Assembly: GCF_000150275.1 (NCBI RefSeq)
Contig: NW_002060944.1
Span: 5,741,102 to 5,805,101 of the forward strand
Direction of reading: 5' to 3'
DNA: 64,000 nucleotides
DNA from: Trichoplax adhaerens
Taxonomy: Eukaryota > Animalia > Placozoa
The notes beneath the pieces are model-generated. The model had not been told where the DNA came from. It saw only the letters and a list, made by a program, of their open reading frames with translations, and searched no databases. This document shows, piece by piece, positions 34,959 to 52,648 of this stretch. Every line of letters starts with the position of its first letter. Position 1 is the stretch's first letter. A program made the translations under genes and the position numbers.

Positions 34959-35477
34959 GATGATATAAGTACACGCCACTCTTCTGTGATGATGGTCTTG
35001 TTAATGTTGTATACGTATATATAGTAAAGGTTTAGGCAAACTATTTGTCGAATTCCTTGTCGTTTACAGGTCAGTACATTCGATATACTAAAGCAAATTA
35101 TATTATCAACACAGTTATTCAGCTTAGTGTACTGTACAAGAGTACATCTGTTACTTACTAAAATTTATCTAGAACTAATCAAAGCGTTGAAAAGTGAACT
35201 GGACAAGCTCTATTCAATACTATTTCGCACATAACTATATCAGTGTCGAATCGAGAGTAGAATTGAACACTAGAAATCGGCATAAAAGGATCGTTAACGA
35301 GCTTCTTATGGATTGCTTGTAACTACTAGGATCTCCTGCAAACTACTCATAGGTTTCGTACCGAGCTTGTAATGTAGTGTGTGTTGTTGGTTGTTGTAGC
35401 CAAACTACAGCCCTGTTCTAGTTTCAACATAAACGTTGTTGGGATTACGGCTGCGCAGACTACTGGAATCAGTACTG

Positions 35478-36425
35478 CACAAATTCTGTGTCCAGTTTTA
35501 GTCTTGTCGCCATGGACTAGGCAACCCCGGTGTCACGGAGTCGCGGGTATACTACTGTGAACTACTATTACTACCACCAGAAGGTCATCCGTCCGTACAG
35601 TCGTCACACAAATTCTGTGTCCAATTTTAGTGTTGTTGCCATAGACTAGGCAACTACCTGTGCCACACACTCACGAGTACACTACTGGGGTCTACTATTA
35701 CAGACCACCCGAAGGTTGTCCGGACGTACAGTCGTCGCACAAATTTTGTGTCCAGTTTTAGTGTTGTTGCCATAGACTAGGCAACTCCCGGTGTCACGGA
35801 GTCGCGAGTATACTACTGTGAACTACTATTACTACCACCAGAAGGTCATCCGTCCGTACAGTCGTCACACAAATACTGTGTCCAATTTTAGTGTTGTTGC
35901 CATAGACTAGGCAACTCCCGGTGTCACGGAGTCGCGAGTATACTACTGTACGTGAACTACTATTACTACAACCAGAAGGTCATCCGTCCGTACAGTCGTC
36001 ACACAAATTCTGTGTTCAATTTTAGTGTTGTTGCCATAGACTAGGCAACCTACCGGTGCCACGCACTCACGAGTACACACTACTGGGGTCTACAATACTA
36101 TTCTTACAGACCACCAGAAGGTCATCCGTCCGTACAGTCGTCACACAAATTCTGTGTCCGATTTTAGTGTTGTGGCCATAGACTAGGCAACTACCGGTGT
36201 CAAGAACTCACAAGTAGTGTACACTACTGTACTGTTAACGACCGTTAATAATACGGACCACTAGAAGGTCATCCGTCTGTACAGTCGTCGCACAAATTCT
36301 GTGTCCAGTTGTAGTGTTATTGTTACCATGGGCTAGGCAACTACCGGTGCCATGAGTCACGAGGACACTACTCTTAACTATTTTGACGGACTACCAGAAG
36401 GACGCCCGTAGTCCAGCTGTCGTCA
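35478..36425. repeat. Tandem array of 7 units (129-147 bp) between the divergent STRAD and PH-RCC1 genes
   Basis: Units start at cacaaatt(c)tgtg near 35478, 35607, 35738, 35868, 36002, 36144 and 36291. Conserved core: ccagaaggtcatccgtccgtacagtcgtcacacaaattctgtgtccaattttagtgttgttgccatagactaggcaac. Confidence 0.95.
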
Positions 36426-36761
36426 TAGGGATTAGCGATTGCGCCATTTGAAGTCTTTTACTCGGACTAATTTCTAAATACATTTCTTTATCCTATTAAA
36501 TCAATAAATTAAATATAGTTGATTAATTTGCTACTGTACTTGAAAAGTTCTAACAGCTACAGGCGTGAATATGAACTATCCTTAAAACAACAAAACGTGT
36601 TTGCCAGAAGGAAAGACGGATGATCTGCCTCTGGACAGGCCAATCGAAGGTGGAGGGATTCGTTAAAGTCAATCACACAAGTGGTCTTATGCTAAGTTAT
36701 GCATAGTAACTACTGTTAGTAGAGTGGACTTAAATTAATGTAGGAGTTAGCGACCTAAACT

Positions 36762-36777
36762 CTGACGTCAGGAAATC
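36762..36777 (+). promoter_or_regulatory. CRE palindrome overlapping an ETS-like core, ~180 bp upstream of the PH-RCC1 ATG
   Basis: cTGACGTCAggaaat; motif match only. Confidence 0.3.
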
Positions 36778-36949
36778 AACATTTTTTAGCCCTGTCAGGG
36801 GTCTCTATTTTACGGCTCTACCTAACAACGATAGCTCATGCTAGCGTATTGAATCTATTCCTAGCAGTCTAGACTAAATAAGGGAATCGATATTGATAAT
36901 ACTGTATAAACAGTATTAATGCCCTGCCTTGCCGTTTAATGATTCCAAA

Positions 36950-39900
36950 ATGACAACTGAAAACCAAGTTGTCCATGCCTTGAAAGAGATGATAGGAGGA
37001 AACTCCTTGCTTAAAGTGGGAAGAAATGTAAGTGATTGTCATCATACCGGGTTACTATAGTAAGGAAGTAATGCTATGATCGACTATGGTATCATTCTAA
37101 CTCTACTGTATGTGATAGAATAGCGGACTTGGATTAATTAACGGTCGACTGTGATAGTCATGTACCGTACATCTATTAATCTTATCTCTGGTGCTATCAA
37201 CCTTAAAAATTGAATGACTAGATTAAAGCATTGCCTCAAGCATCATGGTACAGTTATTTCAACCTTATCATGATATAAATTCAATCACCCCATTTATCGA
37301 CAAAGGCAAATACATCAGATAATCAATCATACTTTTATTTTATGCCAAGATATAAGATTTCGTTTTGTATTCTGTTACTTGTGTCATATACTGCAGATAA
37401 AGGCACCAAACCTAAACGAGGGTTGTAACCTTCAAATATAGCTACCGCCCTAGTCTGCTGTCAGATATGTCTTTCTCGATCCACTGACAAACAGTCGGAT
37501 TCCAGTACTGACTGACAATCTCTCATCGTCATGAGCTCATAGTAACTATAAGTCTTTTCTAGGCCAAACCACAAAATAGAAATCTTGCTGAAAACTCAAT
37601 CAATTTATGGCATAGCTACGTAAACATCAATACTTACATAATATTAGCTATTAAAACATACAGTACAACTGTCTAATATAAATTAGGGTCTGCTAATGGT
37701 GTAAATGCAGATAACGTCGATATCGCTAAAGTTTCAACATGTGTCACGACTATAATGTAAAATTTAATTTGCAATAATCTATAATCAAGGTTTCGCTTAC
37801 CTTGAAGGTATAGAGGAAAGATCAATTTCTACATTACTGTAGGCTACAGTACAATAGCATATGGCTAAACTTTATGCAATCTACAGTAAACAGTATGTGC
37901 TCGTACAAGGAAACAAATTAAGAATAAACGTTCAACTTCAAATGAATAAGTAAATAATTCCAATAGGAGTTATTTCCTTAGAAATCAAACCATTTTATTT
38001 CAAAAATAGAATCTAAAGTGATCTATTGGTTAAATAACCTGCTTATTGTACTAGATATCAATTAATCATCGATAAAGGAATAACTCTGACTTACTATACT
38101 GAAAATAGATATAGGTGTATGTTGCAATCTTGGTTTGGAAACATAAATTGTGATTGCTATCTATATAATCTATAGTAGTAGGCCCTATAACGTACGTACA
38201 TATTACTATTAGAATATGAGTATGCCTAAGTATGCCACCAAAAATAAACGAGTCTACAGAATTGCAAATTATCACATAGGAGTAACAAGAATATTCTAAT
38301 TCTGAAAACATCTATACTTTAAAACTTATATTGAAACGCAAATTAATCAGATCACCTTCAGCCCTAATTTCGGCTGTAACCAAATGACCTAATATTTGCA
38401 ATACCATTGCGTCTACCTACTATGGAATGAGATTACCATTTGAATAGGCGATGAAGACAAACCTTCTATATAATAGATTAAATCGTTTACACATTGTACA
38501 CAGTTATTCAATATGCACGCTCAGATTACGCACATGTACTGTATCTTATTGAAACCTCAGTCTAAATTTTCGTGTCATAGTTTCTATAACAAAAATTGAA
38601 AGTACTGTAGTCAATCTCCTGTGTGCTACTCACTATTTACATCAATTTAGTGCTTTATCATTTAATTTTCTGCAATTATTCAACCATCTTGATATTTATA
38701 TTCTATAAAATGTATACACTTATGTTTCTAGGGAAAAGCGCATTTTAGGCATTTTAGGCTAGCAAAAGGTAAGTTCAGAGTTCACGCAATTCATGTAATA
38801 CATAACAATGTAAGGAAATTAATTAATGTCAAGTAGTGCAAATTATAGAGAAATCTATAAGTGCAAAGTACGTACATCATCGAGAGAGTCGGTTTGACTT
38901 TTTTCTTATTTTCATACTGACTTTGATTTCTTAAATTTATAGACTTATCTGGCATCAGTTGGAGTTCTCCACGCAAAGATAAACAAGAAACTATAATCCT
39001 AGTTTCGCAAATGGATTCTCTATTATTAGGACAAAAAACAAAAGTTTTTCTAGCCAAACCAATGCCAGAATCAAAGGTTTCTTTCTTTTATTAATATATC
39101 AAAGTGATAACTCTACATCAAGATATAAACTAATTATTATTATTAATAAAACTATCGTCTTCTTTTTACGAGATAGACTCTGTCCTTCTCATTACTGTAT
39201 TCGGATAGTGAAGGCTTCCATCGTTCGCTAGATATAGTATGCCAAAAGCAACGAGAATTCGATATATGGATAATAGGATTACAACAATTAATCAATGGAA
39301 TCGACGATAAGTCAATTACAACAGAATTATTCCAAGATGCCAAGACAGAGTTAATAATTAATACAGAACAATCAGTAGACGATTTGGTAATACTTAGCTG
39401 ACCCTATATTGCATTTTCCATCATCCAGACATAATTTAGAAAATAAATAATTTAAAAATCTTCAAATTTTTTTAGGCCGAACTTGATCATTTAATCGTTC
39501 TTAATTCTGCACAAATTGATCAATCTGTCTTCGGTGTATACACCTGGGGAAGTGGAATAAACGGTGCATTAGGTCATGGAGAAGATATTGATATACCATC
39601 TCCTAGAGTTGTTGAGGCTTTGTTAGCATATAACATTAAAAGATTAGCTTGTGGCTTACATACAGTGTTCGCATTAAACGGTATATTTTGTAATAATGAT
39701 TTAACCTTATTGTACTTGATGTTTTACTACCTTTTGAAAATAATAATTAAGGCTTTACTTTCAAATATTCGAGCAGAAGATGGCAAGGTTTATTCCTGGG
39801 GCTTAGGGAAATATGGCATTTTAGGACAAGGAAATCTACGTAGTAGATTTGCACCCCTTAAGATAGCTAGTTTTAAAAGTAGTAACGTCATCGACATTTC

Positions 39901-41727
39901 CTGCCATGAATTACATGCCGCAGCTGTCACATGTTAGAAAGAGAGATTTTTACTTCGAATATATAAATATTCTTAAATATTATTCATGTTATTTTAACAA
40001 GGCTTGAGAAACTTATAAGCTGTCAAAAATTTTAGCTTCAGGTGAACTTTACACATGGGGTAAAGGTTCTGAAAATTTTAATCGCCTGGGATACTTATGC
40101 CAGAATAAGCAAACGAGTCCGGCTTTGGTTCATTCTCTTTCGGCATATACTATTTTCAGTGTTGCATGTGGATACAATCACACTTTGGGTTAGTACGTAT
40201 GAAAAATTTATTGTCCTTGAAACTATTGTGATCAACTGCAACGACATCCACATCATATCTGATCAAAACGTATATATACAATAATTACTAAATGAGTCTG
40301 TCTGCTAAGTTAGTCGTAATGTTAAATGTTAAGTACTTGTAGCTGTCGCACAACTAAAAATACTTATAGATACTATTACTAAAATTAATTAAAACACTTA
40401 TCAATTGCATCCTGATAGCTGTGACAAATACAGGTAGTGTATATTCGTTTGGCGATAACTCAAACTCACAATTAGGAGTTGGTGATACTGAGCCGTATGC
40501 CGAGCCTCAATTAGTCACTGTATTAAATGATGAAAACATTATCAAAGTTGCATGTGGTAAATATCATTCTGCTGCGCTATCAGGTATTGTATGATTAATT
40601 ATCGATGATAACGTAATACTATCAATACTATTTTAATTAAGCTACGTAAGCACTTATAACTTAAATTTAAATTTGGGTTTTACTTCAATTTCAATCTCTG
40701 TCCTAATTTTGTTTTAAATTACTTGATCAATCACAGCAAAAGGAAATTTATTTCTTTGGGGCCTTGGTGACGACGGCCAATTGGGTCTAGGTAATTATAA
40801 TCTTTCAACCGAACCCACTATACTTCATATAGGAGAAAAGAAAGCTAAAGTTATGGATGTTGCTTGCGGAGATCTCCATACATGCATACTGACAGGTATA
40901 CTTGTTACATTTAATATGCGAAACGAAATTTTTATGACAGCGATTTTCTGCAAAAATAGTATCTGTAAGCAACTGTAGTATAGACTTAAGCACCCAATCG
41001 TGTATCATCGTTCCTAAATAATGGAAATTTTTCTACATTCTTGTAGTCGGTGGCCTTGTCTACGCCTTCGGTAGTAATATTTATGGACAAATAGCTGCAC
41101 CGAGTATGAATAAATTTCACCTTCCTTACCGCATTAGTTTCAATACAAGTAAAAGATTTGTATCAGTGTCATGCGGATCTTTCCATTCCGCAGCTATTAC
41201 AGGTATTTTTATATTGCTAATAGACATAGACGTAATTTGACGTAATAATTTTAATCAAATACGCTTTCTGATCTATATGGAATTTCTAATGGAAATAGTT
41301 ACAAATAGTAAAATACTACTATTAGTTTAAAATTTCTCCATCCAATCTTACGTCGTTTCCTCGAAAATTTTTAATAATAGAAAACGGTAAATTATATGCA
41401 TGGGGACTGGAGACCGATGGAAGATTAGGCTTGGGGGATTGTAAACAAAGGTATAGTTATAAAGATACAGTTTTACTTAGCAGTCAGTTTTATATGTTCA
41501 AGGTAAACGTTTACTTTTATAAATACACAAGGAAACATTTTATAGCGCCACTTGTGATCATTAATTTTGATTATCCTATTTTGTGCAGATCTTCACCGAC
41601 GGAAGTGGAAGGATTTCGTGATAAGAAGATAGGTCGTATAGCCTGTGGTAGTAAACATACAGCAGCGCTGATAATTCTTTCAAGTTCTGCGGACAAAAAG
41701 TTCAAATCTAGTTGGCGAACTACATAA
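36950..41727 (+). CDS. PH domain + seven RCC1 repeat protein (plant PRAF/RLD-like N-terminal architecture), 12 exons, ~530 aa
   Basis: Exons 36950-37027, 38732-38768, 38943-39076 and 39177-39386 splice in frame to a PH domain. Seven RCC1 blades follow (VYTWG, VYSWG, LYTWG, VYSFG, LFLWG, VYAFG, LYAWG, each with an xCGxxH-like end). Stop at 41727. Confidence 0.85.
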
Positions 41728-42804
41728 AACGATACTTTATATATGAAACGAAATTAATTTTTTTACAATATAGTTTAAACTTTCATACTAAAACCGATTT
41801 TATCGAATATGATAGTAATATCATTTACACCTATATCTACTAACAAATTCATCACAAAGTACTCACACTTAGCAAAATTTATCTCTGTAAAGCTCTATAA
41901 TTAATGCCTTTCTTTATTTTAAGTATCTCAATCAAATTATCTACTCTGTGTTAGATATTATCGATATTTATCATTATTTGTACTAGTATTTATGAGCAAA
42001 TTTATTGCAAAGTACTAAAATCATTTCAGGTTTTTGAAAGCTAGAAGGAAAATTCTGGATTGAACACTATGCTTCATTGAGCAATTTTAATCAAACAATG
42101 AGATGAGCATATACTGTACATGCAATTGCAGTGTTGGCTAAACCAATTTCTTACTTCACTGTTTGCAGATACAGTAGTTTTGCTGTACATAAAATTTTAC
42201 TGTAAAATTCCAATTTTTGATCCATTACATTCAATAAATTTCAATGGGACAAAAGATAAATTACGTCGTATACCGTTTATATTTTTCGTACTATCTGTTT
42301 TATTATACATGTGGAATTAGTTTCGTTCGTTATTGACTCTTTTCAGGGAACAAAAGATTAACATGATATCACAGTCATACTGAGTAACAAAAGTTACATT
42401 ATACAGTAGTTTGATTCTCCAGCATCGATTGCAATCCATTCAAAACTTAAGACATGAACAAACGACGAACAATATTCGTCGTATAACTGTTATCGTACAT
42501 GTAAAATAAATCATGAAGACACCTGAATTTAAAGGTTATATGTCATCGTTTACTGTGTATAGAAATAATATTATCAAAGAACAGCACACATCAATTACGC
42601 CAAATATCCAGTTTGAATTTCCGGTAGTACAGCATATTAGTTTTTGCACAGTTCTTTGTAAATTAAATTTATTAATGATGAGCATTTGATTAGCGCATTT
42701 CCAATAAATTGAATTATATAGTACACTTTTAAAATGATAGCTCTAATGCAATATCATCTTATCACCAAATAAGTGTCACTACATTTATATTTCTTGCCCA
42801 TTAT

Positions 42805-45800
42805 TTACTCTTTTCTTTCATCATCTTCACCTTCACTTTCATCGCCGACCAAAGCCGCGAATTTACTTTCTTGACTAAATACCTACCCAATATTTAAGAT
42901 ACATGCTAACTTAGATGGCACTTCAAAATCTTAACGGTATACGAGTAAAATAATCATGTGTTACAATAATAAATATTAAAGAATTTGATATCTTCTAACC
43001 GGTTTCGGTGGTTCTTCGTACTTCTTAAGCTCCACAGGCCTATAGGGTTTCCTACCCCTACCACCTCCTCGACTTCCTCTGCCACGACCTCTACCACCAA
43101 ATCCTCTGGAGTTTCCATCACTGCTGAATCCATATCGTTTATCGCTACTTTTGTCATCTCGACTATTATCATCGTCCTGATCTTGATCTGCACTTGTTGT
43201 CTTATCAGCTGCTTCCTGATCATCGTCTTTACTCGTCTGATCTTTAGCAACAGCTAAGCGTTCTTCAATTTCTCGCTCTTTGGCTGCCGTATCAACCGGC
43301 CTGGCTGAACCAAAGATTGACGATGAACGGTTGACTTCTTCCTCTTTATTTTCTATAGGTTTTGATCGAGGTTTCAAATTGAGTGCCCGTCTTTGTGGTG
43401 CATCTAGAATTTTGTGATATTAACGGTTAAACAATTAAACAGTATTTACGGTTATTAGGTTAAATTGTAGCTGGTGACATCTATAGTAATACAGCAGATA
43501 TTCATATGAAGGCATAGTAGTCATATTAGGGTTATCCATTAACCTTTCTCTTTCTTTTCTTCGTAATCGCCCTGCTTAGTGTTATCGCTACTTTCAGCTC
43601 TTTCTGTATCTCTTCTCACAGAATCATTGTCCTCCCTTGATTGCCTACCACCATCTACATTATCAACATCATAATTACGTCTTTCGTCTCCATTTTCAAA
43701 TCTGGATGATCTAAAATTATCAAAGCCACGTCTTTTCCCGTCATCCCCATTATATCGTGAAGATCTACCTCCAAAACCACCTCTATCGTAGTTTCTTCTT
43801 CCGCGTCCGGAAGATTCAAAATCATTATATCTACGGTTTCCACTACCAAATCGATCTTCTCTTCCGCGAAAACTGCTCCCTCCATCATTGTATCGACTAC
43901 CAACACCAGCAAATCTGTCATCGTCACGATCATATTGTCTCCTATTCGATCGAAAGTCCTCTGTTGGTGGTCCGGCGCGTCTCCAATTATCGCTATCGGT
44001 GCTTCGTTCACCACGATCGTATCTATCATGATGTGATCCTCTACTCCCTCTGTCATTGAAATTATTTCTGTCATTATCACCTGTATGATTAGCGAAAAAC
44101 AAATGAATTACAAGGTCAATTTTTGACTTACCACATGAACTAACAAAACAACAAGACAAAGAGTACATACTAGATGGGAAAATACAAATATAGACAGTAT
44201 ATAAATAATAAATCGTTGTTAAGCATACGATGTTAAGATTTTTAAGACATAACTTTCGATATACAGTAATGATTTCATCAGTTAATGGATAAAAAAAATT
44301 TTATTTATTGTACTAATAATAATTAATCTTTTAATTAATTAGTCTATAAACCTTACCTCCAGCAATATCCACACGGATTTTACGATTTTTCAGTAACTAT
44401 ATGGGGTAAATGAATAGAAGATATAAGTTTTGTTTAGAGATATAGGATTACATATAGATTACTTTTTAATTAAAAATAATGAAAAAAATCATCAAGTTGT
44501 CAGTTATGATAACAACTATTTCCTTTGAATATGTCAAAACGGCATGACATACTGTATACGCGTTCAGTAATAGGGGAGAGTTATGTATTGTTAAGACCAC
44601 CATAATATACTGACGCGCGTATAGTTTAGTTAATGATCAGAAAGTCAAGTTGAAGGAATAAAGTACTTTAAAGATACAGTAGGTCTGTCAAATTAGCAAG
44701 ACGCCCATCATTTTGAATATTCGAATTCACCTGATCATTTAGTGACATCGCATTAACTAGTGATTCTAAATCTTCAAATTCGGTATATCCAAATCCTCTT
44801 GGTCTACCATCCGTTGTGCCTTTGGGTAAGCGAACAGAGTTTACCTACGTATAACGAAAATAGACAATCATTACTTGATTTATCACATCATTCCAATATC
44901 TACAAGTATCGTAAGAATCGATCTACAATGTCATTTATATTGAAGAGAAAGCATATATATTCCTCTTGTTAACAGAACATGACATTATATACGGTAGTCA
45001 ACGTTATACAATGTAATTAATTGGCTGCAAACTTCTATTCCCTATCACCATCACTACAGTAAGATGTTAACAAGATTACAAGTAAGGTAGTTGTGTATTT
45101 CAATCCATTATTTCTGATCAATGCGTAAGGTAATCAAGATGATGAAGTTCTACTTCACAGAATGTCAGATAGATACTGTAGTCGATCATTTGCAAAACAA
45201 GTAGAGTATATTGAACTGACCTTGCTATCCTTGAAGAATTGAGTAATATCTTCTTCAGTCACATCATAAGGAAGATTAGCAATGTAAGCAGTAAAAGGTG
45301 GCTTAGTAGGAAGTCTACTCCTATCGATACCAGCCAAGGCACGAGCAGCTTTTGGAGCTGTTGGTAGCATGGATGTATCAATGGTGGGCTGACTCCGCCT
45401 ATCTGTAAATGAACGATGATGACGACGATGGAAGATTAATTTTGTATCAAGATGTAGCCATTGAAATTGGTGAATAGTGTAGAAATGATGAATGTTAAAG
45501 AGTAGAGCACAATCGAGGGAGAAAAGTCCATTTCTAGCAGGTGCTAGAAGGATATGGATACTGTATAAGACTATTTTTTTCTATCTACCAAGTACGATAG
45601 ATAAGTATTTGAATATTTAATGCATAGCATCGCAATCCTAGATTATAAAGACTGCATCATGCCGTATCCAATTGATCGACATTGATGAGAAATTTGTAAT
45701 TGTACTGGTATGTATCTGAGTATAATAAATCAAGTTATTGTTGTACAACACAGTTTATAGGATAAAAATAGGCCTATCCACATGTCCAATCTAAGAAGGA

Positions 45801-47224: not shown

Positions 47225-52648
<5,424 letters not shown>

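What the first reader, a model, noticed from the sequence alone, without database searches (positions are those of the whole stretch)
36950..41727. Animal gene with a plant PRAF/RLD-type PH + RCC1 architecture
Seen: four small exons not present in the ORF track splice in frame to MTTENQVVHALKEMIGGNSLLKVGRN-GKAHFRHFRLAK-DLSGISWSS...LLLGQKTKVF...SFSLLYS...RSLDIVCQKQREFDIWIIGLQQLI, followed by a complete 7-blade RCC1 propeller. Known: plant PRAF/RLD proteins begin with a PLC-type PH domain of the form LLKYGRxGKPKFCPFRLSxD...GQRTxVF...SFSLIY...LDLICKDKxExEVWIxGLKAL, directly followed by RCC1 repeats and then FYVE, coiled-coil and BRX domains. They act in polar membrane trafficking. This protein matches that PH signature motif by motif and stops where the plant FYVE domain would begin. 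I know of no human or fly protein with this architecture. Inference: an ancient eukaryotic lipid-binding trafficking or GEF-like scaffold kept in a basal animal and lost in bilaterians, or an old, now intron-rich, horizontal acquisition.
Basis: partly seen in the sequence, partly recalled or inferred. Interest (0 to 1): 0.8.

Follow-up and report, generated by a model that had tools for sequence, protein, structure and literature searches.

The report
Placozoan PH–RCC1 gene, FYVE lost
This is a real 12-exon Trichoplax gene for a lipid-binding PH domain fused to a 7-blade RCC1 propeller. It is the placozoan copy, minus its FYVE finger, of an uncharacterised PH–RCC1–FYVE family found in cnidarians, sponges, Capsaspora and some protists; that family shares its three-domain core with plant PRAF/RLD proteins, and I found no bilaterian member.

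Summary
Twelve exons (36950-41727, +) join in frame through 11 GT-AG introns to give 553 codons. Exons 1-4 tile one PLC-delta-type PH domain (Pfam PH_12) and exons 5-12 give seven RCC1 blades. The reading frame stops 17 codons after blade 7.

The gene is not a plant-like oddity. Its nearest relatives are ~600-aa PH_12–RCC1x7–FYVE proteins of Cnidaria, Porifera and Capsaspora (40-49% identity). Similar proteins occur in an amoebozoan (Endostelium) and a heterolobosean (Acrasis). Plant PRAF/RLD proteins share the same core at 31-33% identity.

Nine of the 11 Trichoplax introns sit at the same codon and phase as in the sea anemone Actinia, six as in the sponge Amphimedon, and none as in a plant. 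The propeller and PH trees both place Trichoplax inside a well-supported holozoan clade. This means vertical descent, not horizontal transfer. No bilaterian appeared among the family-level hits.

Trichoplax has lost the canonical FYVE finger that its relatives encode in the same last exon.

The same model is already public for Trichoplax sp. H2 (RDD45256.1, misnamed "UVR8"). The T. adhaerens reference model is a partial, RCC1-only protein. A role as a membrane-recruited GEF or scaffold is inferred, not shown.

I did not build or search the joined spliced protein.

The parts
36950..37027 (+). Exon 1 (26 codons, start ATG): N-terminus and first strand of the PH domain, ending ...LLKVGRN
   Evidence: It hits the ortholog PH profile at positions 2-21, ranking 3rd of 4088 segments. 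The intron after it is at the same codon and phase as in Actinia and Amphimedon.
38732..38768 (+). Exon 2 (37 nt, phase 0 to 1): PH strand 2, with the basic GKAHFRHFR stretch
   Evidence: PH profile positions 22-37, rank 4 of 4088. The intron after it is shared with Actinia.
38943..39076 (+). Exon 3 (134 nt): middle of the PH domain (W..SPRK, GQKTKVF)
   Evidence: 48.4 bits on PH profile positions 34-82. tblastn with the cnidarian proteins gives 43% identity. The intron after it is shared with Actinia and Amphimedon.
39177..39386 (+). Exon 4 (70 codons): last PH strands and C-terminal helix (to about 39296), then the linker
   Evidence: Pfam PH_12 19.1 bits at positions 95-131. phmmer finds cnidarian PH–RCC1–FYVE proteins at E 2e-5. 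48 bits on the PH profile.
39476..39680 (+). Exon 5: linker plus RCC1 blade 1
   Evidence: RCC1 PF00415 41.5 bits.
39681..39776 (+). Intron 5: 96 nt, in frame and free of stops, with a tandem NAGNAG acceptor. The H2 gene model reads through it (+32 aa); the T. adhaerens reference model splices it out.
   Evidence: ORF 39620-39937 spans it. P0057 versus P0125. Orthologs have no insert here.
39777..39932 (+). Exon 6: RCC1 blade 2
   Evidence: RCC1 55.5 bits. The intron after it is shared with Actinia and Amphimedon.
40036..40188 (+). Exon 7: RCC1 blade 3 (skipped in reference model XP_002109477.1)
   Evidence: RCC1 39.7 bits. Present in P0057 and absent from P0125. The intron after it is shared with Actinia.
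40419..40583 (+). Exon 8: RCC1 blade 4
   Evidence: RCC1 62.7 bits. Intron shared with Actinia and Amphimedon.
40737..40895 (+). Exon 9: RCC1 blade 5
   Evidence: RCC1 51.5 bits. Intron shared with Actinia and Amphimedon.
41047..41202 (+). Exon 10: RCC1 blade 6
   Evidence: RCC1 47.9 bits. Intron shared with Actinia.
41381..41450 (+). Exon 11 (70 nt, phase 1 to 2): first half of blade 7
   Evidence: The phase-2 intron after it is shared with Actinia and Amphimedon.
41589..41727 (+). Exon 12: second half of blade 7, a 17-codon tail and TAA. In orthologs the same exon runs on into the FYVE finger; here it does not.
   Evidence: RCC1 25.7 bits. FYVE-region alignment. Actinia exon structure. No FYVE remnant downstream.

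Best explanation
SHOWN. The window is from Trichoplax adhaerens. Bases 36950-41727 (+) hold one 12-exon gene of 553 codons. It encodes an N-terminal PLC-delta-type PH domain (Pfam PH_12), a roughly 45-residue linker and a closed seven-blade RCC1-like propeller (RLD). It is the placozoan ortholog of a ~600-aa PH_12–RLD–FYVE family present in Cnidaria, Porifera and the filasterean Capsaspora. Relatives with the same three-domain core occur in Amoebozoa, Heterolobosea, an unidentified marine protist and, extended by coiled-coil and BRX domains, in plant PRAF/RLD proteins. The gene was inherited vertically within animals, and I found no bilaterian member. The Trichoplax lineage has lost the C-terminal FYVE finger.

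INFERRED. The PH domain keeps counterparts of four basic residues that contact the inositol phosphate in PLC-delta1: K30, R40, R56 and K57 (roles recalled from memory). These are K22, R32, R50 and K51 of the public H2 protein P0057. It therefore most likely docks the protein on a phosphoinositide-bearing membrane. The propeller then acts there as a binding platform or exchange factor for a small GTPase of the trafficking machinery, as reported for the RLD of Arabidopsis PRAF1/RLD1 on Rab8a and for the functional link between PRAF and GNOM. Relatives with a canonical FYVE (WxxD, RRHHCR and RVC motifs) would be able to read PI3P as well as the PH ligand. The Trichoplax protein can only use its PH domain.
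For: - Gene structure and domains.
- Collinear tiling of the PH domain by exons 1-4, and ranks 1-4 of 4088 six-frame segments.
- Independent public model with the same exons 1-4 (RDD45256.1, Trichoplax sp. H2).
- Orthologs and their architecture.
- Propeller tree: holozoan clade 99/95, Trichoplax with Cnidaria 94/93.
- PH tree: holozoan clade including Trichoplax 98/98; PH–RLD–FYVE PH domains separated from the PLC-delta-type PH domains at 87/89.
- Intron positions: 9 of 11 shared with Actinia, 6 of 11 with Amphimedon, 0 with the plant Neltuma.
- Closest solved PH domain: PLC-delta1 (1MAI, E 1.9e-9), then PLC-gamma and ELMO1.
- The ESM Atlas model of P0057 residues 1-126 matches plant PRAF and PLC PH models at TM 0.69-0.71.
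- Canonical FYVE motifs in holozoan and protist relatives, variant motif in plants, no FYVE in Trichoplax.
- No FYVE between the stop and the next gene.
- Function of plant relatives: PMC6941992, PMC8748900, bioRxiv 10.1101/765594.
Against: - I had no RNA evidence for the junctions. The H2 protein's cluster has a single member, so no transcript-derived protein for this gene clustered with it.
- The function is inferred by analogy only. RLD propellers are versatile, and no member of the non-plant family has been studied in the literature I could search.
- K32 of PLC-delta1 is Gly in Trichoplax, although an Arg follows it. The lipid specificity is unknown.
- Support for uniting the holozoan, protist and plant propellers against other RCC1 families is weak (78/88), and one long-branched gregarine protein intrudes.
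- Absence from bilaterians rests on one word-seeded profile search.
Confidence: 0.8

Rival explanations
1. The PH_12–RLD–FYVE arrangement was assembled independently in Holozoa (or Amorphea) and in plants by domain shuffling. On this view the Trichoplax gene resembles PRAF/RLD but is not homologous to it along its whole length.
For: Support for one clade of all PH–RLD–FYVE propellers is weak (78/88) and a gregarine RCC1 protein without PH intrudes. No intron position is shared with the plant gene. The FYVE motif differs: canonical RRHHCR in holozoans and protists, R(K)HNCY in plants (PMC3017826). PRAF is reported absent from chlorophytes.
Against: The three domains have the same order and spacing in Holozoa, Amoebozoa, Heterolobosea and plants. 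The PH tree unites their PH domains against the PLC-delta type at 87/89. The AU test does not reject one clade of all 26 propellers (p 0.143). The plant PH profile scores holozoan PH domains at 69-86 bits, against 38 for the one full-length PLC-delta-like PH domain tested. The nearest large clusters by language-model features are all plant PRAF (0.95).
Confidence: 0.2
2. Horizontal transfer from a plant or alga into the placozoan lineage, with introns gained later.
For: On the surface, the architecture is best known from plants, and the literature calls it plant-specific.
Against: The closest relatives are cnidarian and sponge proteins at 40-49% identity, against 31-33% for plants compared with the Actinia ortholog. 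Trichoplax nests inside Holozoa in both trees. Nine of 11 introns are shared with Actinia, 6 of 11 with Amphimedon and none with a plant.
Confidence: 0.02
3. A gene-model artefact: a small PH-only gene (exons 1-4) next to a separate RCC1 gene (exons 5-12). The T. adhaerens reference annotation implies this by starting its partial model in blade 1.
For: XP_002109477.1 (TRIADDRAFT_21647) is RCC1-only and marked partial. No transcript evidence was available here.
Against: Exon 4 carries the end of the PH domain plus the linker, and exon 5 carries the linker plus blade 1. The two join in phase 0, within two alignment columns of a phase-0 Actinia intron in the variable linker. Every ortholog is a single PH–RLD chain. 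The H2 annotation joins them. The reference model also skips blade 3, so it is plainly incomplete.
Confidence: 0.03
4. A UVR8-type UV-B photoreceptor, as the database name of the H2 protein and of several cnidarian orthologs suggests.
For: Only the automatic names ('Ultraviolet-B receptor UVR8(-like)'), which reflect general similarity between RCC1 propellers.
Against: UVR8 is a bare propeller whose chromophore tryptophans sit in repeated GWRHT motifs (recalled from memory). No blade of this protein has that motif; the equivalent positions read CGLHT, CHELHA, CGYNHT, CGKYHS, CGDLHT, CGSFHS and CGSKHT. The protein also carries a PH domain, and its orthologs carry a FYVE.
Confidence: 0.01

Closest known systems
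Holozoan PH_12–RLD–FYVE proteins, uncharacterised (e.g. Actinia tenebrosa XP_031563851.1, Nematostella, Hydra, Amphimedon, Oscarella, Ephydatia, Capsaspora CAOG_00256)
   Same: PH_12 domain, linker and seven RCC1 blades are collinear. Identity is 40% overall to the Actinia protein (45% over the propeller, up to 49% over the PH). Nine of 11 intron positions are shared with Actinia. Trichoplax falls inside their clade.
   Different: The Trichoplax protein ends 17 residues after blade 7 and has no FYVE finger.
Trichoplax sp. H2 RDD45256.1 ('Ultraviolet-B receptor UVR8', 585 aa)
   Same: The same gene in the sister strain, with the same exons 1-4 and the same stop. I saw only two amino-acid differences in the PH and linker part.
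   Different: That model reads through the 96-nt in-frame intron 5, adding 32 residues that no ortholog has. Its name is misleading.
Plant PRAF/RLD proteins (Arabidopsis PRAF1/RLD1 and relatives; PH, RCC1 and FYVE domains-containing protein 1)
   Same: An N-terminal PH_12 domain directly followed by an RCC1 propeller. The PH domains group together against the PLC-delta type. Plant proteins align to the Actinia ortholog at 31-33% identity over 98% of its length.
   Different: The plant proteins are about 1000-1100 aa and add a variant FYVE (RKHNCY), a coiled coil and BRX domains that bind LAZY/BASL partners. None of these is present here. No intron positions are shared.
PLC-delta1 PH domain (PDB 1MAI)
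   Same: The closest solved structure by profile (E 1.9e-9). Counterparts of K30, R40, R56 and K57 are kept.
   Different: It sits in a phospholipase, not in front of a propeller. Trichoplax's own PLC-delta PH falls on the other side of the PH tree.

Membership tests
Plant PRAF/RLD (class V FYVE proteins) | N-terminal PLC-type PH domain (PH_12) | tested here: met
   PH_12 scores 28.8 bits (cut-off 27) on the H2 protein. Exons 1-4 tile the domain.
Plant PRAF/RLD (class V FYVE proteins) | Six or seven RCC1 repeats directly after the PH domain | tested here: met
   Seven RCC1 matches, exon by exon and on P0057.
Plant PRAF/RLD (class V FYVE proteins) | FYVE finger with the variant (K/R)(R/K)HNCY motif | tested here: not met
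   No FYVE in the protein or in the 1.2 kb downstream.
Plant PRAF/RLD (class V FYVE proteins) | C-terminal coiled coil and BRX domain | tested here: not met
   The protein ends after blade 7. No BRX or BRX_N hit. Holozoan orthologs lack them too.
Holozoan/pan-eukaryotic PH_12–RLD–FYVE family | PH_12 + seven-blade RLD, collinear with family members | tested here: met
Holozoan/pan-eukaryotic PH_12–RLD–FYVE family | Placement inside the family's clade in trees of both domains | tested here: met
   RLD tree 99/95. PH tree 98/98.
Holozoan/pan-eukaryotic PH_12–RLD–FYVE family | Shared intron positions with animal members | tested here: met
   9 of 11 with Actinia, 6 of 11 with Amphimedon.
Holozoan/pan-eukaryotic PH_12–RLD–FYVE family | Canonical C-terminal FYVE (WxxD, RRHHCR, RVC) | tested here: not met
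   Absent. I read this as secondary loss, because all sampled relatives have it and the Actinia gene encodes its first half in the same exon as blade 7.
UVR8 photoreceptors | GWRHT motifs carrying the chromophore tryptophans; a bare propeller | tested here: not met
   No such motif in any blade. A PH domain is present. The motif itself is recalled from memory.
Phosphoinositide-binding PH domains of the PLC-delta type | Basic residues of strands 1-2 and the 3-4 loop that contact the head group | tested here: inconclusive
   In the profile alignment to 1MAI the positions of K30, R40, R56 and K57 are basic in the family, and in Trichoplax. K32 is Gly. Binding itself cannot be tested here.

The most novel reading that the evidence does not exclude
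The PH–RLD–FYVE core of plant PRAF/RLD proteins is not plant-specific. It is a very old (possibly LECA-age) membrane-trafficking module that animals inherited, that survives in placozoans, cnidarians and sponges, and that was lost on the bilaterian stem. Trichoplax is a natural FYVE-less variant that relies on the PH domain alone.
Probability: 0.55. Interest if true: 0.5.

Novelty: new member of a known kind. Interest (0 to 1): 0.4.

Why it matters
Plant papers describe PRAF/RLD proteins, which regulate PIN and BASL polarity, as plant-specific (PMC8748900, bioRxiv 10.1101/765594, PMC3017826). This gene and its relatives show that the PH–propeller–FYVE core exists in non-bilaterian animals, Capsaspora, an amoebozoan and a heterolobosean.

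Three consequences follow:
- Only the BRX/coiled-coil extension and the variant FYVE seem to be plant inventions.
- Tractable non-plant systems such as Nematostella, Hydractinia and Capsaspora become available for asking which GTPase the propeller serves.
- The family joins the list of genes lost at the base of Bilateria.

On the practical side, the T. adhaerens reference model (XP_002109477.1) lacks the PH exons and blade 3. The H2 model retains an intron and carries a wrong name (UVR8).

Tried and rejected
Exons were used one by one by reference, and the public H2 protein P0057 served as the full-length stand-in.
- phmmer of exon 4 alone against PDB gave only chance hits.
- A word-seeded search with the PH region of the Actinia ortholog found only 4 close cnidarian proteins.
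- The other PH_12 hits in the genome are not second copies. C1404 is a PLC-delta-like PH exon. The weak C1411 hit has no RCC1 exon in the 11.5 kb searched, 10 kb of it downstream.
- The FYVE hit at window 51285-51593 (+) is not the missing finger. It follows same-strand ORFs 49193-50965 that I read as coiled-coil exons (no Pfam hit), and a minus-strand RRM/Arg-Gly-rich gene (about 42976-45370) lies between it and this gene.
- Exact-product look-ups failed for Nematostella, Capsaspora, Prosopis and the shorter Actinia isoform. Actinia isoform X1, Amphimedon and Neltuma were used instead.
- Literature searches for a description of non-plant PH–RCC1–FYVE proteins found nothing.
- Rfam and tRNA scans of 35000-43500 found nothing.
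Full report
**Where the window comes from.** The window is G000:C1413:5741102-5805101 of a 105.6-Mb, 1414-contig assembly with 33% GC. The GenBank protein XP_002109477.1 (TRIADDRAFT_21647, Trichoplax adhaerens) reads letter for letter like the translations of exons 5, 6 and 8-12. The window is therefore from Trichoplax adhaerens.

**Observation.**
- I reconstructed the exon chain from the sequence and checked it by script.
- There are 12 exons on the + strand: 36950-37027, 38732-38768, 38943-39076, 39177-39386, 39476-39680, 39777-39932, 40036-40188, 40419-40583, 40737-40895, 41047-41202, 41381-41450 and 41589-41727.
- All 11 introns are GT..AG and the phases are consistent. The total is 1662 nt, i.e. 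553 codons plus TAA.
- Every search of the window used single exons by reference.
- Pfam, exon by exon, gives RCC1 above the cut-off for exons 5-10 and 12. With exon 11 completing blade 7, that makes seven blades.
- Exon 4 gives a sub-threshold match (19.1 bits) to the last 37 positions of PH_12.

**Is the PH domain real?**
- phmmer of exon 4 against 1.8 billion representatives found only 11 proteins. The full-length ones are cnidarian ~600-aa proteins with PH_12, seven RCC1 repeats and a FYVE finger. Their N-termini visibly match exons 1-4.
- I built a PH profile from 13 cnidarian, sponge and Capsaspora proteins, without Trichoplax. It hits exons 1, 2, 3 and 4 at profile positions 2-20, 22-33, 35-77 and 80-122.
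- In a scan of all 4088 six-frame open segments of the window, these four exons are the four best hits. They are on one strand and in order. The exon-by-exon alignment A2 shows the tiling directly.
- The public protein RDD45256.1 of Trichoplax sp. H2 (P0057, 585 aa) uses exactly these exons. It scores PH_12 at 28.8 bits (cut-off 27) plus seven RCC1 repeats, and has no FYVE.
That intron is 96 nt, in frame and free of stops, and adds 32 residues that no ortholog has.
- The T. adhaerens reference model is partial. It starts in blade 1, skips blade 3 and uses the upstream AG of a NAGNAG acceptor.

**What kind of PH domain is it?**
- The closest solved structure by profile is PLC-delta1 PH (1MAI, E 1.9e-9), followed by PLC-gamma N-terminal PH and ELMO1 PH.
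- The ESM Atlas model of P0057 residues 1-126 matches plant PRAF and PLC PH models equally well, at TM 0.69-0.71.
- In a PH tree, all PH–RLD–FYVE PH domains (holozoan, protist, plant) are separated from the PLC-delta-like PH domains at 87/89. The PLC-delta-like side is Trichoplax's own PLC-delta exon (L001) plus one metagenomic protein.
- In the same tree, Trichoplax lies in a 98/98 holozoan clade. The outgroup is small, so I treat this as supportive rather than conclusive.

**The family.** A profile of seven cnidarian proteins (A1) retrieved the whole family within the length window (species names).

| Group | Members found |
|---|---|
| Cnidaria | Actinia, Exaiptasia, Nematostella, Hydra, Clytia, Hydractinia, Sanderia, Rhopilema, Oculina, Acropora |
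| Porifera | Oscarella, Amphimedon, Ephydatia |
| Filasterea | Capsaspora |
| Placozoa | Trichoplax sp. H2 |
| Amoebozoa | Endostelium |
| Heterolobosea | Acrasis (with an added RhoGEF-PH) |
| Unidentified | one MMETSP protist |
| Plants | PRAF proteins, at lower scores but 98% coverage |

- Pfam confirms PH_12 + RCC1x7 + FYVE in the representatives.
- Every named hit above about 500 bits is non-bilaterian.
- No bilaterian protein with PH_12 + RCC1 appears among the 120 best hits.
- The nearest large ESM Atlas clusters to the Actinia ortholog are all plant RCC1+FYVE clusters.

**Vertical descent or transfer?**
- The propeller tree gives a holozoan clade at 99/95, with Trichoplax beside Cnidaria at 94/93. 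Plants form their own clade.
- Union of all PH–RLD–FYVE propellers against BTB-RCC1, HECT-RCC1 and other RCC1 proteins is only weakly supported (78/88), and one long gregarine branch intrudes. The AU test does not reject their monophyly (p 0.143).
- I mapped exon structures from genomic loci of Amphimedon, Actinia and the legume Neltuma.
- Nine of the 11 Trichoplax introns lie at the same alignment column and phase as Actinia introns. These include all three inside the PH domain.
- The other two (introns 4 and 5) lie within a few columns of same-phase Actinia introns, in regions where the alignment is disturbed. Six introns are shared with Amphimedon and none with the plant.
- This rules out a plant-to-placozoan transfer.

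**The missing FYVE.**
- Holozoan and protist relatives carry canonical WxxD, RRHHCR and RVC motifs. Plants carry the known variant R(K)HNCY (PMC3017826; 10.1101/765594).
- In Actinia the exon that ends blade 7 runs on into the first half of the FYVE. In Trichoplax the same exon stops after 17 further codons.
- None of the three frames of 41700-43000 holds a Cys-rich remnant.
- The nearest FYVE in the genome (window 51285-51593, +) belongs to another gene. It follows same-strand ORFs that I read as coiled-coil exons, and it lies beyond a minus-strand RRM gene.
- Trichoplax has therefore lost the finger. A Capsaspora isoform without FYVE also exists (P0069).

**How it probably works (inference).**
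- In the alignment to 1MAI and the family alignment, the positions of PLC-delta1 K30, R40, R56 and K57 are basic in Trichoplax. K32 is Gly, followed by Arg. The contact roles of these residues are recalled from memory.
- I therefore expect phosphoinositide-dependent membrane docking.
- The propeller of Arabidopsis PRAF1/RLD1 was reported to exchange nucleotide on Rab8a. PRAF/RLD acts with the ARF-GEF GNOM in polar trafficking (PMC6941992; PMC8748900).
- By analogy, the Trichoplax protein is most likely a membrane-recruited platform or exchange factor for a trafficking GTPase. Unlike its FYVE-bearing relatives, it would have no PI3P reader.

**Comparison and novelty.**
- It is not a member of plant PRAF/RLD in the strict sense, because it has no FYVE, coiled coil or BRX.
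- It is not UVR8 despite the database name, because it has no GWRHT motifs.
- It is a FYVE-less member of the wider PH–RLD–FYVE kind.
- The protein is already public for strain H2, so the object is not new. What seems undescribed in the literature I could search is that the 'plant-specific' PRAF core exists in non-bilaterian animals and several protist groups.
- I rate interest as moderate (0.4).

Noticed in passing
window 35478-36401: A 130-bp unit is repeated 6.8 times in tandem (80% matches), about 550 bp upstream of this gene's ATG. Each unit carries a GTTGCC-N8-GGCAAC dyad. Another first-stage note reads these as RFX X-box-like sites. The 8-nt spacer is longer than in canonical X-boxes as I recall them. 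A strict X-box pattern search with 2 mismatches found nothing in this stretch; its 4 window-wide matches are no more than chance gives.
   Followed up: partly
window 39681-39776: Intron 5 is 96 nt, in frame and free of stops, with a tandem NAGNAG acceptor (AG at 39772-73 and at 39775-76). The H2 annotation reads through it, and the T. adhaerens reference uses the upstream AG. This is a likely source of annotation error, or of minor isoforms.
   Followed up: partly
window 49193-52100 (+): A separate downstream gene. It has ORFs that look like long coiled-coil exons (49193-49954, 50379-50666, 50786-50965; no Pfam hit), followed by a canonical FYVE finger split by an intron (51285-51593; PF01363 56.6 bits). 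From memory this resembles a FYCO1/EEA1-like FYVE–coiled-coil protein. I did not identify it further.
   Followed up: partly
window 42976-45370 (-): A minus-strand gene with an RRM exon (45158-45370) and long Arg/Gly/Asp-rich exons (42976-44168). It looks eIF4B/eIF4H-like. It separates the PH–RCC1 gene from the downstream FYVE gene.
   Followed up: no
G000:C1404:1056754-1056945 (L001): An exon encoding the C-terminal two thirds of a PLC-delta-type PH domain (PH_12 47.8 bits), presumably from the Trichoplax PLC-delta gene. I used it as the outgroup in the PH tree.
   Followed up: partly
P0068 (Acrasis kona) and P0066 (JGI metagenome): Heterolobosean-type relatives carry an extra N-terminal RhoGEF + PH module in front of PH_12–RLD–FYVE. 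This puts two putative GTPase-regulating modules in one chain.
   Followed up: no
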